Positions 59,651-63,697 of a stretch of 64,000 nt of DNA are shown in pieces. The position numbers were made by a program, and so were the translations under genes. How positions within the stretch are numbered: position 1 is the stretch's first letter; every line of letters starts with the position of its first letter. Origin of the DNA: Calcarisporiella thermophila CBS 279.70 (taxonomy: Eukaryota; Fungi; Calcarisporiellomycota); NCBI RefSeq assembly GCF_041956535.1, contig NW_027192211.1, positions 433,995-497,994 of the forward strand, written 5' to 3'. The notes beneath the pieces are model-generated. The model was not told where the DNA came from and did no database searches. It saw nothing but the letters and a program-made list of their open reading frames with translations.

Positions 59651-60640
59651 ATGTCAGAGCCAAATGCATATCAAACACATCCCACACCCCATCCAAGCTC
59701 CAACGTGACCCCGACCCCTGCCGAGGATCACCAGTATTCAGCCTCCTCCGATCTTGAAAAGAGCAACCTTAGTGCCAATGCCAATACCAAACGGCGATGT
59801 CCAGCCTGTTGTTATAATCCGTGTCCGCGATGCTGCGGGTACTGTCCCGTGTGGCTTCGTTGGTCCAGCATCACATGTTGCATTCTAATTATCTTGACGG
59901 CCATTGTTCTTGCGATTCTGTTCGGAACGACGTTCCGCCAGCCAGAGGTCAAGTTCTTGGGGCTGGGCCCGAATCCAAATGGCGCACAGCTCTACGTGGT
60001 GAATGGAACAAGATTTAGCATTAATGTAGGCCTCGTTATGCAAGTGGTGAACCCAAACATTGCGGGGGCGAAGTTTTCTATGATAAAAGCCCAAGTAAAT
60101 ACCGAGTTTCTGTCTTTGTTTCATATCTTCCATTTATATTCCCTCCCAACGCCTCCTTTCTTCCTCCTCTCTGCGCCCTCCCACTTATCCCCCTCTCTGC
60201 TTTTTTGTCTTAGGCAAAATATCCTGATCCACGAGACCCTTCGGCCCCGGGATTCCCCGCGGGAGGCGGCAACCTCACCGACGTCAACATCGGATCCCAT
60301 AGCAACACCACGTTCGTGTTCCCATTCTCCGTCGACTACGACCCCACCATCGATCAAAACAAGGTCATGCTCCGCGATATTGCCGATCGATGCGGCCTAC
60401 TGGGCTCGCCCAAGCGACCGCTCCAGATCAAATACGACCTGACGCTGTTCGTTCACTTGCTGGTGGCGACGATTTCGCCGACCATTCCACTAAGCACCTC
60501 GCTGGACTGTCCGATCCAGGTAAGCAAAGCTCATAGATTATCCGGCTGCAAATCGAGCGGAAGAACTGATCCACGCTTTTTTATAATTCCCCATCCAGAA
60601 CGGCCAGTTGCCCGGAATTGACTCATTGCCACAGCGCTAA
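59651..60640 (+). CDS. Single-pass membrane protein with Cys-rich juxtamembrane segment and LEA_2/TMEM106-like Ig domain, 3 exons
   Basis: CPACCYNPCPRCCGYC before TM ITCCILIILTAIVLAILFG, then PEVKF..VVNPNIAGAKFSMIKA..GGGNL..FPFSVDYDP..DIADRCG..C. Confidence 0.75.
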
Positions 60641-61001
60641 AATGGGTTTGACATGTGGTTGCCTTTATAATTCCGAGTTAATATGGCAAAATAAATCTCG
60701 CAATAATAACTCTAATAAAGTCAGCGGCTAAGTCAGGGTGAAGCATCGATTTGTCAGAAACCCGGTTTCCTTAGATGGAAGCCCGGACAAAATTTTCTAT
60801 GAACTACTCGGATGAATAATTACCAAATTTCCCGGTTTAGCAAAATCTATTCCGATGACCGAGAAGTGCGCGACCATGACTGAGCAAAAGGGTGTCTTCT
60901 ATTACTGTTATTTAAGCGAAGCTCATGCTCTCCGCCTCTCACTTTTTCTTTTTGGTTGAACTTCCAAACCATCAAAAAACAAGATTAAAATTCATCGCGT
61001 A

Positions 61002-61088
61002 ATGGAGCGCAACACTTGTAAACAATGTGGGCAAGGCCCATTCCAGAGCTGGCAGGACTTCCTCGCCCACCGTTGCAAGCCACCTTAG
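61002..61088 (+). CDS. 28-aa micro-ORF encoding a single C2HC-type zinc finger
   Basis: MERNTCKQCGQGPFQSWQDFLAHRCKPP*: C-x2-C-x4-F-x5-F-x2-H-x-C; TATTTAA about 90 bp upstream and an A-rich leader. Confidence 0.55.
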   Translation: MERNTCKQCGQGPFQSWQDFLAHRCKPP

Positions 61089-61571
61089 GCCGTCGCTTTT
61101 GGAGATGGAAAATTGCCTTCTCCATTCTCCCTCAATACTTCTTTCTCAAGACTTGACTTCTCCAATGCAAGCTAATCTTAATTCTGAATGGAACTGATAC
61201 CTGAACGATTCCGACGAATGCGGCTTTCGCCTCTCCCGGCCACCAGTATTATTAAGACATATTTCAAACATTTTTATCTGATTCCGAAAATGTTGTGGCT
61301 GGTGTTGTGATGCTTTGTATCATTATTTTTCTATAATGTGCAGCCTTGGCAAATTACAGCCATCTCATGGGCTTGATCCTTATTCTCATTTTGCTTGTAT
61401 TTCTGCATGGCCATGGTCCATGACTTTTCTTTTGCTCTATATATGTTTCCATATTTGTTTTTCATAATAAACTCCCTCAGGGTTGGGATGCTTTGATTTT
61501 TTTCCTGCTTACCGCGCGTTCCCGAAAGGTCCGGTGCTATTTTTGACTAAGAAACAATCAGATAATAGGCA

Positions 61572-61721
61572 TACGTAAATATCCGATATAAAAAAAAGAA
61601 GATTCACGTAGCGTCACTAATGCAAAACTGCCCCATTAGGCAATTCCTTGATCATCTGCAGCTGACGTCTACGGCCACACGTAAATTTCAGAACTCAAAA
61701 GAGTGTCAATGCCTGACGAAA
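61572..61721. promoter_or_regulatory. Cluster of ACGT/TGACG (CRE/bZIP-like) cores upstream of the 62012 micro-gene
   Basis: TACGTAA, CACGTAG/CGTCA, TGACGTC, CACGTAA and TGACGAA within 150 bp. Confidence 0.35.
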
Positions 61722-61931
61722 CCCAACGCAAGTTGATCGTAGTGGTTGTCATACTTTATCACACCTCCTTCCGAAAGTAAAAATTAAACGAAAAATAGAA
61801 ACAAGTATGGAGGAGTCACCGTCATCTTCTCCTGCTTATATTCTTGGCAATTGAGGTGCTTATTTCTGTTCCGTCTTTTTTCTCTTCTGCTCATCCTTCT
61901 TAGCCTCCCAATTCCATTGAATCCCATTGCT

Positions 61932-61939
61932 TATAAATA
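61932..61939 (+). promoter_or_regulatory. TATA box of the 62012 micro-gene
   Basis: TATAAATA about 75 bp upstream of an ATG in strong context (caatcaacaATGG). Confidence 0.55.
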
Positions 61940-62011
61940 ACAGCACCATTTGCGTCTCGTCATCCCATACTTATATACCCTGTGGTTTTCACCATTACCA
62001 AGCAATCAACA

Positions 62012-62263
62012 ATGGCATACCTTATCCGCGAGTCCCCGAAGCTGTCAAACTGCGAGAGCGAAGAGTGGGTTTGTCCGTGGTGTTTAAAGCGGTACTTATT
62101 TCCGCGCTGGTCGCCTCTTTTTTCATTATGAATTACTCATTGGCGTCCTTCGTCCTTACTAACGCGAGGTTTTTTTTGCGTTTGTTTGTTAATTCATAGC
62201 TTCTGGTCTGTGGAGGAATTAAACTGGCATATTGTTCGGTTACATGATGGACATTGGGGTTGA
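62012..62263 (+). CDS. 38-aa spliced micro-gene encoding a degenerate single C2H2-like finger
   Basis: Exon 62012-62064, intron 62065-62199 (GTGGGT..TACTAAC..CATAG), exon 62200-62263: MAYLIRESPKLSNCESEDFWSVEELNWHIVRLHDGHWG* with C-x4-F-x5-L-x2-H-x4-H. Confidence 0.6.
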
Positions 62264-62845
62264 ATTGCCTCCGAATCGCTCGAGCTTTCGAATTACATGA
62301 CCTGTTAGACGCCTTATCCTTAATTCTATACTATCCATCGGTGGTTATATACATACGACAAAGGTTTTGAATATTAGTACACGAACTCTTTTGAGAATCT
62401 TTATTTTATAGCCTTCTTTTTTCCTTCGGCATATTCTTATATACCCATATAATAACAATTGCTCGTGTTGATCTGATATGAAGCATTTTTTTTTCTTGTT
62501 TTCCAATCCAATTGTTTTCTATTGTTTTGTATATATAACAGCAACAATCTGTTTTATTTCTACTCATTTTGTCATTTTGTATGTGTGCGTGCCTCTTTTT
62601 TTAATAGAAATATAAATTGCTTGATTTTTTCTTTTCCAAGCACTTTCTGTATTCTTTACTTCTTTGGTCTTCTTTTCTTTGGCTGCCAAGTTTTTCGCCT
62701 AGAAGAGAGTTGAGTGGCAAAACATCAAAGCCACTGTTGAGGGTGGCTGTGGCCGGCTCATTAGGACTAGATAAAATTTTTGGAGCATCGATTTCTGCGC
62801 TGATTGACAGCGAGACATTGGAAAAAGCAGGACTAGAGGGAAACC

Positions 62846-63697
62846 ATGTCGGGTATATGTCTAGCTCGCTTACAACAGGAGCGCAAGGATTGGCGCAAAA
62901 ATCATCCTTATGTGAGTGCCCGATTGAGTTACTACATGTAAAAGGCTGCAGTTCCTGAATGCGACCTTTCATGAATAGGGATTCTATGCTCGGCCGGCAA
63001 AGAAGGAGGACGGGACACTGGATCTTATGAACTGGCACTGCGGAATACCAGGAAAGAGTGGGGTAGGCTTAGCTAGCTCTCTTTTATCACCCTAGATAGT
63101 CTACTAAAAGCGGATTGTTTTATTTGGGAGCAGACTTCATGGGAGAATGGTATTTTCAAGCTGCAAATGATTTTTACTGAAGGTAAATAATCGACCTCTA
63201 CACCCTCCTTTCCATGAAGCATTGGATAATAATGTTTGTTTTTTCCCTTTTTCTTCATTGTTTATATCAGAATACCCGAGTCGGCCTCCCAAATGTATGC
63301 GTACACTCCCTAAAGGAAGAATGTACAATCCATTTACCACCGACTTTTCTCAACTAGGTAAATTCACGCCTCCGCTCTTCCACGTCAATGTTTACCCGTC
63401 GGGCACGGTGTGTCTCTCTATTCTTAATGAGGAGGAGGGATGGAAGCCTGCCATTACAATCCGACAAATACTCTTGGGAATTCAGGATCTCCTAGACTCT
63501 CCTAACATGGACAGCCCTGCTCACCCTGATGCATACGCATTATATAGGTAAGCAAATATCCCCAATGAGAGCTATTGGAAAATTTCAAGTGGTCCTTTAA
63601 GAGCTGGTTTATCGAAACGGTTTGTGTGTATAGACGTGACCGGGATGCATATGACAAAAGAATTCGACAGCAGGCGAGGGAGAATGCGCAGCAATAG
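62846..63697 (+). CDS. UBC9: SUMO-conjugating enzyme Ubc9, multi-exon
   Basis: [22 protein letters not shown]|[64 protein letters not shown]. Confidence 0.96.

What the first reader, a model, noticed from the sequence alone, without database searches (positions are those of the whole stretch)
61002..62263. Tandem pair of single-zinc-finger micro-genes (candidate undescribed microprotein system)
The 2.2-kb gap between the LEA_2 gene and UBC9 holds two co-oriented tiny genes too short for the ORF track. Seen in sequence: their peptides align on a shared finger core, CGQGPFQSWQDFLAH versus CESEDFWSVEELNWH (C-x4-F-x-S-x2-D/E-L/F-x2-H), both with four residues between Cys and Phe where classic C2H2 fingers have three. 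Each has a TATA-like element, an A/C-rich leader and a pyrimidine-rich 3' flank. Established: a lone C2H2-type finger rarely binds DNA stably. Inference: these are diverged paralogous microproteins acting as zinc buffers/sensors, ubiquitin- or protein-binding modules, or dominant-negative partners of larger finger proteins.
Basis: partly seen in the sequence, partly recalled or inferred. Interest (0 to 1): 0.8.

Follow-up and report, generated by a model that had tools for sequence, protein, structure and literature searches.

The report
Unannotated one-finger zinc microprotein genes
The gap before UBC9 in this thermophilic fungus (Calcarisporiella thermophila) holds two real but almost wholly unannotated genes for 28- and 47-residue single zinc-finger proteins, which belong to two separate small families kept by selection; what they bind is unknown.

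Summary
Both micro-genes are real.

- **Gene 1** (61002-61088, 28 aa) has eight more copies in the same genome. Similarity stops exactly at the start and stop codons. Flanks are at random identity. dN/dS is 0.04-0.30.
- **Ligand pattern of gene 1** is CX2C-X13-H-X-C, a C2HC variant of the classical finger.
- **Gene 2** is exon 62012-62091, a 108-nt intron, and exon 62200-62263 (47 aa). An intronless paralog on another contig fixes this junction.
- **No kinship shown** between the two families by profile comparison (E 0.18). However, micro-finger genes sit side by side at three loci, more often than chance allows.
- **No relatives elsewhere.** The only outside match is one copy already deposited for this same genome (KAL1923288.1).
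- **No RNA run was listed,** so expression is untested.
- **Function is inferred:** a zinc-folded beta-beta-alpha module that binds a partner, more likely a protein than DNA.

This same stretch was noted before by first readers of this scan (s1-610561, s1-610562). Several other micro-finger ORFs were noted elsewhere in this genome.

The parts
60909..60916 (+). TATA-like element (TATTTAAG), 93 nt before the gene 1 ATG
   Evidence: A TATA-like element lies at -120..-40 in 6 of the 11 family genes, against 10% of background positions. The pattern set was partly chosen after looking at the sequences.
61002..61088 (+). Gene 1: a 28-codon ORF plus TAG. It is a stand-alone C2HC finger (CX2C-X13-H-X-C) and a member of a 9-copy family.
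   Evidence: ORF. (paralogs with the same start and stop). (CDS 61-80% identical, flanks 49%, shuffled 50%). (dN/dS 0.04-0.30). (fold).
61932..61939 (+). TATA box (TATAAATA), 80 nt before the gene 2 ATG
62012..62091 (+). Gene 2 exon 1: 26 codons plus 2 nt of a split Arg codon. It carries the CPWC knuckle.
   Evidence: The junction is fixed by the intronless paralog L012:1414-1560.
62092..62199 (+). Gene 2 intron, 108 nt: GTACTT donor, TACTAAC branch site at 62157-62163, TAG acceptor
   Evidence: Read from the sequence. It has no counterpart in the paralog.
62200..62263 (+). Gene 2 exon 2: last nt of the Arg codon, 20 codons and TGA. It carries the finger helix with His-X4-His and an HDGHWG tail.
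   Evidence: Measured piece by piece, pS is 0.82 against pN 0.20, and flanks are 50-52% identical.

Best explanation
The gap holds two independent, translated micro-genes of Calcarisporiella thermophila. Each encodes nothing but one zinc finger.

Gene 1 (28 aa) belongs to a lineage-restricted family of nine 28-38-aa proteins. Its invariant residues are three Cys and one His (CX2C-X13-H-X-C in the seven canonical copies), a Phe/Phe-Leu core, and an exposed Ser-Trp at the start of the helix.

Gene 2 (47 aa, one intron) belongs to a two-member family with a classical CX2C-X12-H-X4-H finger and a His-rich tail.

Shown: the ORFs are conserved exactly from start to stop, are under strong purifying selection, have their own promoter-like and Kozak-like context, and gene 1 models as a beta-beta-alpha finger.

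Inferred: each peptide folds around one Zn(II) and acts only by binding a partner through the helix face. A protein partner is more likely than DNA, because the peptides carry little or negative net charge and the usual base-contacting positions hold Ser, Gln, Asp or Ala. The two genes are not demonstrably paralogs. Their adjacency fits a recurrent side-by-side arrangement of micro-finger genes in this genome, whether from an old local duplication or from shared regulation.
For: - **Paralogs of gene 1.** Six copies at 59-85% identity, plus a spliced and a divergent copy. All have an ATG 1-3 codons before the conserved block. In the seven canonical copies the stop follows right after the block.
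- **Similarity confined to the ORF.** Flanking 200 nt are 49% identical against 50% for shuffled sequence, while the CDS is 61-80% identical.
- **Selection on gene 1's family.** dN/dS is 0.04-0.30 with pS 0.5-0.96. Variable columns by codon position are 8/10/22 of 28.
- **Gene 2.** The intronless paralog fixes the junction. pS is 0.82 against pN 0.20, and flanks are random.
- **Independent gene model.** The spliced product I read at C4:51492 is identical to the deposited protein KAL1923288.1. That genome was annotated with SnowyOwl, an RNA-seq-guided pipeline (PMC11393059).
- **Translation context.** A at -3 in 10 of 11 genes, P about 2e-5. A TATA-like element at -120..-40 in 6 of 11 against 10% background.
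- **Fold.** The AF2 model has mean pLDDT 80 with one helix over the SW..FL segment. Only 7 of 48,161 chains reach Z>=2. All seven are single zinc-finger domains spanning 27-29 of the 30 residues, among them MOZ CCHC, the NDP52 ubiquitin-binding finger, EEA1 C2H2 and ubi-d4.
- **Family matches.** Weak Pfam C2H2 matches for the gene 2 paralog and the C14 copy. The best PDB sequence matches are PRDM9 and ZNF568 fingers.
- **Charge.** Net charge is 0 to +2 for eight of the nine family-1 members (+4 for the C29 copy) and -2 to -3 for family 2. The six most similar copies have exactly 3 Cys.
- **Not leader ORFs in most cases.** Neighbours are unrelated housekeeping genes, often convergent or more than 1.5 kb away.
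Against: - No expression data. No RNA run was listed for this stretch, so transcription and translation are inferred.
- No Pfam model reaches its cut-off.
- His-X-Cys is an unusual spacing for the last two ligands of a beta-beta-alpha finger. Zinc binding is untested.
- Structural Z-scores are low (2.0-2.5), as expected for 30 residues but weak in themselves.
- No relative outside this genome was found, so selection is measured only between paralogs.
- The choice of partner type rests on composition alone.
Confidence: 0.6

Rival explanations
1. Nucleic-acid-binding mini-fingers. The peptides bind RNA, structured DNA or ribosomal particles, as some lone C2H2 fingers do.
For: - One of the seven structural matches is a finger protein in a pre-60S particle (7uqz_I).
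- Weak zf-met and jaz-type matches for the C14 copy and for atlas neighbours.
- The C29 copy has net charge +4.
Against: - Eight of the nine family-1 members have net charge 0 to +2, and family 2 is acidic.
- Helix positions -1, +2, +3 and +6 carry Ser, Gln/His, Asp/Glu/Ser and Ala/Asn.
- There is no basic tail.
Confidence: 0.15
2. Zinc buffer, sensor or metallochaperone. Many small copies soak up or hand over Zn(II), for instance under heat or metal stress.
For: - In the six most similar copies the only potential metal ligands are the four invariant Cys/His, or those plus one or two extra His.
- The family is multi-copy and the promoters are TATA-type.
- Family 2 has a His-rich tail.
- HSE-like GAAnnTTC units lie upstream of several copies.
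Against: - One metal per 28-47 residues is a poor buffer compared with metallothioneins.
- The strictly conserved exposed Trp, Ser, Asn and Lys are not needed for metal storage.
- No metal-responsive element was found.
Confidence: 0.12
3. Upstream regulatory ORFs. The peptides are leader ORFs that control translation of a downstream gene.
For: The divergent C14 copy ends about 330 nt before an aldehyde dehydrogenase gene on the same strand.
Against: - At C12 and C4 the next gene is convergent.
- At C10 the next gene is more than 1.5 kb away.
- In the window the next gene, 0.9 kb away, is another micro-gene with its own TATA box.
- Conservation of a whole folded-domain motif across 9 unlinked loci is not what leader peptides show.
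Confidence: 0.04
4. Precursors of modified peptides. These would be CaaX-type lipopeptide signals (Cys fourth from the end) or other ribosomal peptide natural products.
For: Cys is the fourth residue from the C-terminus in 6 of 9 copies (CKPP, CVPP twice, CVPL, CEPP, CIPP). The length of 28-30 aa is typical of lipopeptide pheromone precursors (the comparison itself is from my own knowledge).
Against: - Pro at the a2 and X positions is not a prenyl-transferase substrate pattern (own knowledge).
- Three copies lack the spacing.
- The whole peptide is conserved rather than a leader plus a variable core.
- No processing-enzyme neighbours were found.
- Relatives in the zygomycete grade use trisporoids, not peptide pheromones (own knowledge).
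Confidence: 0.03
5. Non-functional sequence: chance ORFs or decaying fragments of larger finger genes.
For: - They are very short.
- Ten of the eleven ORFs are absent from the public protein collection, or in the case of window gene 2 could not be looked up.
- No outside relatives were found.
Against: - Start and stop positions are kept in all copies while flanks are randomised.
- dN/dS is 0.04-0.30 with saturated synonymous sites.
- A at -3 in 10 of 11 genes.
Confidence: 0.03

Closest known systems
Classical C2H2 (beta-beta-alpha) zinc finger, Pfam PF00096 / PF13894
   Same: Gene 2 has the exact CX2C-X3-F-X5-L-X2-H-X4-H pattern. Gene 1 shares the CXXCG knuckle, the Phe, the helix and the His. 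The best PDB sequence matches are PRDM9 and ZNF568 fingers, and the structural matches are single fingers.
   Different: The whole protein is one finger, with no array, linker or effector domain. Gene 1 has 13 residues, not 12, between the second Cys and the His, and ends His-X-Cys. All Pfam scores are below the cut-offs.
Protein-binding CCHC/C2HC and ubiquitin-binding fingers (MOZ CCHC 1m36, NDP52 2mxp, EEA1 3mjh)
   Same: Cys-Cys-His-Cys ligand set, a single autonomous finger, and an exposed hydrophobic helix face. These are among the seven structural matches.
   Different: Those fingers use His-X3-5-Cys. Only the C29 copy does (His-X4-Cys). The acidic residue next to the His that ubiquitin-binding fingers use is absent (own knowledge of the motif; sequences). 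Those fingers are also parts of large proteins.
One-domain zinc-finger micro-proteins of Haloferax volcanii (PMC6562870, PMC11241148)
   Same: Many stand-alone proteins under 70 aa that consist of one zinc-binding module, are encoded by dispersed genes, and are mostly of unknown partner.
   Different: The archaeal ones carry two C(P)XCG knuckles (zinc-ribbon-like, four Cys). These fungal ones have one knuckle plus a helix with His. No sequence relation was found.
Plant microProteins such as mini zinc fingers (PMC9638782)
   Same: A single interaction domain without an effector part, proposed to act by titrating partners.
   Different: microProteins are defined by a larger related protein that they interfere with. 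No larger protein with the family-1 finger was found in this genome.

Membership tests
Classical C2H2 zinc finger (PF00096/PF13894) | Ligand spacing CX2-4C-X12-H-X3-5-H | tested here: met
   Met for gene 2 only: CPWC-X12-H-X4-H across the junction fixed by the paralog. The canonical gene 1 copies do not meet it: CX2C-X13-H-X-C.
Classical C2H2 zinc finger (PF00096/PF13894) | Score above Pfam's gathering cut-off | tested here: not met
   The gene 2 paralog scores 20.1 bits against 27 (PF13894) and 15.6 against 25.2 (PF00096). Gene 1 and the separate exons have no match. The C14 copy scores 16.1 and 15.0 bits. The joined window gene 2 product was not scanned.
Classical C2H2 zinc finger (PF00096/PF13894) | Beta-beta-alpha fold around one zinc | tested here: inconclusive
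   The AF2 model of gene 1 has pLDDT 80 with one helix. All 7 chains with Z>=2 are single fingers, but Z is only 2.0-2.5. Foldseek found nothing. The gene 2 paralog model is poor, pLDDT 60. Metal binding cannot be tested here.
C2HC / CCHC protein-binding fingers | Cys-Cys-His-Cys ligands with His-X3-5-Cys | tested here: not met
   The ligand set is present, but the spacing is His-X-Cys in 8 of 9 copies. Only the C29 copy has His-X4-Cys.
CaaX lipopeptide precursors | C-terminal Cys-aliphatic-aliphatic-X | tested here: not met
   Cys is at -4 in 6 of 9 copies, but it is followed by X-Pro-Pro or X-Pro-Leu. Three copies have other spacings.
microProteins (dominant-negative relatives of larger proteins) | A larger paralog carrying the same domain | tested here: not met
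   Profile searches of the whole genome found only the micro-ORFs. The one hit in a 380-aa frame has no Cys.
Upstream ORFs | Main ORF closely downstream on the same strand and transcript | tested here: not met
   The next genes are convergent or more than 0.9 kb away at most loci. The C14 copy is the exception. Transcript ends are not testable here.
Haloarchaeal zinc-finger micro-proteins | Two C(P)XCG motifs | tested here: not met
   Family 1 has one CXXCG knuckle and family 2 has none.

The most novel reading that the evidence does not exclude
Calcarisporiella thermophila carries a whole hidden population of stand-alone one-finger micro-genes. At least 16 were seen here, in several families, and they often sit in adjacent pairs. 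This would be a eukaryotic counterpart of the haloarchaeal zinc-finger micro-proteome. The genes may be co-regulated through a shared upstream AAATTTC / GAAATTTC (heat-shock-element-like) motif and tied to life at high temperature.
Probability: 0.25. Interest if true: 0.7.

Novelty: new variant of a known kind. Interest (0 to 1): 0.55.

Why it matters
Genes this short are dropped by standard annotation. Of the ten ORFs that could be looked up by reference, only one is in the public protein collection, and the joined gene 2 product could not be looked up.

Here paralog comparison alone gives strong evidence that 28-49-aa finger-only proteins are maintained by selection in a fungus from a phylum with a single sequenced species.

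If confirmed, they would be among the smallest autonomous eukaryotic zinc-finger proteins. They would give a clean system for asking what a lone finger can do, and an unusual CX2C-X13-H-X-C site to study. They are also a reminder that fungal intergenic gaps hold coding genes.

Tried and rejected
- **RNA evidence.** The look-up of sequencing runs listed no run.
- **Pfam on separate pieces.** Blank.
- **Word-index protein search.** Blank with the gene 2 paralog and with the family-1 alignment.
- **Exhaustive profile search.** 133 hits, of which 132 are multi-finger proteins with summed weak scores. The only true family member is from this genome.
- **UBC9 exon search for close relatives and synteny.** No close relative exists in the collection, so cross-species synteny could not be tested.
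- **Foldseek against the PDB.** No match.
- **Structure prediction.** The single-sequence model of the gene 2 paralog was too poor to use.
- **Kinship of the two families.** hhalign E 0.18.
- **Other features in 60600-62850.** Rfam, tRNA and repeat scans found nothing.
- **Neighbouring genes.** The neighbours scanned around the paralogs share no family.
- **Known stress and metal elements upstream.** Nothing convincing.
- **Joined gene 2 product.** Never sent to a search or fold tool. It was handled exon by exon by reference, so that joined step is left out.

Full report
**What is in the sequence**

The window is G000:C21:433995-497994 of a 28.2-Mb fungal genome.

Gene 1 runs from ATG 61002 to TAG 61088 and has 28 codons, with Cys6, Cys9, His23 and Cys25.

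- exon 1 is 62012-62091;
- the intron is 62092-62199, 108 nt, with a GTACTT donor, a perfect TACTAAC branch site at 62157-62163 and a TAG acceptor;
- exon 2 is 62200-62263.

This keeps the CPWC knuckle and gives a 47-residue product with a textbook CX2C-X3-F-X5-L-X2-H-X4-H finger.

**Test of the splice model**

A search of the organism's own genome with exon 2 found one paralog, at C1:981482-981628. It is intronless. It reads without interruption through the sequence that my junction creates in the window copy, and it ends with the same HDGHWG-stop. Taken piece by piece, synonymous sites between the two copies are saturated (pS 0.82) while pN is 0.20. The 200-nt flanks are at random identity, 50-52%. 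The joined window product was never sent to a search or fold tool. It was treated exon by exon by reference, and that joined step is left out.

**Gene 1 is one of nine**

The 28-aa peptide finds six further copies at 59-85% identity, on contigs C12, C10 (two copies 590 bp apart), C4, C16 and C14. A profile of the seven finds two more:
- a copy at C4:51492 split by a 78-nt intron (GTATGT..CTAAT..TAG);
- a 38-aa divergent copy on C29 with His-X4-Cys.

Every copy has an ATG 1-3 codons before the conserved block. In the seven canonical copies the stop follows directly after the block. The invariant residues are Met1, Asn4, Cys6, Lys7, Cys9, Gly10, Phe14, Ser16, Trp17, Phe20, Leu21, His23 and Cys25.

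Similarity ends at the ORF borders:

| Region | Pairwise identity |
|---|---|
| CDS | 61-80% |
| 200 nt upstream | 49% |
| 200 nt downstream | 49% |
| Shuffled controls | 50% |

Nei-Gojobori dN/dS is 0.04-0.30 with pS 0.5-0.96. Variable columns by codon position are 8, 10 and 22 of 28. These are old duplicates held by purifying selection on the peptide. They are neither repeats nor chance ORFs.

**Signals of independent expression**

A TATA-like element lies 40-120 nt before the ATG in 6 of the 11 genes of both families, against 10% of background positions. Part of the pattern set was chosen after I had seen the sequences. The -3 position is A in 10 of 11 genes and G in the other, P about 2e-5.

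Neighbouring genes are unrelated: isocitrate/isopropylmalate dehydrogenase, an amino-acid permease, an MFS transporter, a FYRN protein, an aldehyde dehydrogenase and a GH5 enzyme. They are often convergent or distant, which argues against leader ORFs. The exception is the C14 copy, about 330 nt upstream of the aldehyde dehydrogenase gene.

No RNA run was listed for the stretch, so there is no direct expression evidence.

**Identity of the organism, and an independent gene model**

The exhaustive profile search returned one full-length single-finger hit, P0124 (28 aa, 62 bits). It is letter for letter the spliced product I had inferred for C4:51492. It is KAL1923288.1, VTP21DRAFT_8268, from Calcarisporiella thermophila, on a contig of 1,346,566 bases, which is the length of C4.

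The genome is strain CBS 279.70. The newly sequenced genomes in that study, which this one appears to be among, were annotated with SnowyOwl, a pipeline that selects models with RNA-seq where available (PMC11393059). The species is the only one listed in its phylum in the taxonomy copy.

The nine other ORFs that could be looked up by reference are not in the public protein collection. The joined gene 2 product could not be looked up.

**Relatives elsewhere**

None were found:
- word-index searches;
- two metagenome scans;
- the exhaustive search, whose other 132 hits are multi-finger C2H2 proteins with summed weak per-finger scores.

This absence is weak evidence. ORFs this short are rarely called, no close relative has a genome, and eukaryotic genomes could not be searched in six frames here.

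**What they are**

- Pfam gives only sub-threshold C2H2-type matches.
- The PDB sequence search aligns the family-1 knuckle and helix to PRDM9 and ZNF568 fingers.
- The AF2 model of gene 1, built from 8 sequences, has mean pLDDT 80 and one helix over the Ser-Trp..Phe-Leu segment.
- Of 48,161 PDB representatives, only seven reach Z>=2. All seven are single zinc-finger domains that cover the whole model, among them the MOZ CCHC finger, the NDP52 ubiquitin-binding finger, the EEA1 C2H2 finger bound to Rab5 and the ubi-d4 finger. Z is only 2.0-2.5.
- The language-model atlas places both families next to clusters of 31-54-aa C2H2 proteins.

**How they most likely work**

This part is inference. The six most similar family-1 copies contain exactly three Cys, and all nine keep the finger His. 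One Zn(II) per peptide is therefore the natural reading. The fourth ligand sits on a flexible C-terminal tail, since its position moves between His+2 and His+5 within the family.

On the helix, the positions that classical fingers use to read bases carry Ser, Gln/His/Leu, Asp/Glu/Ser and Ala/Asn/Ser. Net charge is 0 to +2 for eight of the nine family-1 members (+4 for the C29 copy) and -2 to -3 for family 2. Specific DNA binding by a lone finger of this kind is therefore unlikely. The invariant exposed Trp and Leu point instead to a protein contact. I cannot name the partner.

**Are the two genes a pair?**

The profile comparison shows no kinship (E 0.18), and no other family-1 copy has a family-2 neighbour. 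Yet adjacency recurs. The cases are the window pair (0.9 kb apart), the C10 pair (0.6 kb) and a pair on C2 at 197033 and 198632 (1.6 kb, two further kinds of micro-finger ORF).

For 16 genes in 28 Mb, about 0.02 pairs within 2 kb are expected by chance. This count has an ascertainment bias, because the window pair was found by eye. Old local duplication or shared regulation are both possible.

**Wider picture**

A Pfam C2H2 scan of the genome and the profile searches turned up further finger-only ORFs that begin with ATG just before the finger and stop soon after it:
- two 40-aa copies on C2 (63% identical);
- a 30-aa ORF on C2;
- a 34-aa ORF on C3;
- a 30-aa ORF on C32.

Other first readers of this scan noted similar ORFs elsewhere in the genome. 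I did not locate or check those.

**Verdict**

The two genes are genuine, selected, unannotated one-finger microprotein genes from two separate families. The kind (C2H2-type finger, stand-alone zinc micro-protein) is known. The form is new: a 9-copy fungal family of 28-38 aa with CX2C-X13-H-X-C. Function is open.

Noticed in passing
G000:C2:198632-198751 (+) and C2:146313-146417 (-); C2:196962-197033 (-); C3:1342250-1342321 (-); C32:200523-200588 (-): Five more stand-alone single C2H2 micro-ORFs of 30-40 aa, each starting with ATG just before the finger. Four score above the Pfam zf-C2H2 cut-off, and the C32 one was a weak profile hit. The two 40-aa ORFs on C2 are paralogs, 63% identical.
   Followed up: partly
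window 61002-62263; G000:C10:486994-487671; G000:C2:196962-198751: Micro-finger genes lie next to each other at three loci, 0.6-1.6 kb apart, where about 0.02 such pairs are expected by chance for 16 genes in 28 Mb. The count is biased by how the window pair was found.
   Followed up: partly
upstream 130-335 nt of 7 of the 11 family genes, e.g. window 60825-60831 and 61683-61689: The 7-mer AAATTTC or its complement, often as the heat-shock-element-like GAAATTTC, is present upstream of 7 of 11 genes against 7% of background 300-nt chunks. The 8-mer AAATTTCT is present in 5 of 11 against 1.2%. This is borderline after correction for the number of words tested.
   Followed up: partly
L025:1534-1611 (G000:C4:51534-51613) and window 62092-62199: The only two introns in these families both sit immediately before the conserved finger Phe. 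They differ in phase: phase 0 in the C4 copy, and after 2 nt of the preceding Arg codon in window gene 2.
   Followed up: no
L017:4148-5080 (G000:C14): The most divergent canonical family-1 copy ends about 330 nt upstream of an aldehyde dehydrogenase gene on the same strand. It is the one case where a leader-ORF role cannot be excluded.
   Followed up: no
G000:C4:51492-51656: Only this one family member is in the public protein collection (KAL1923288.1, hypothetical protein VTP21DRAFT_8268). The nine other ORFs that could be looked up by reference are absent.
   Followed up: yes
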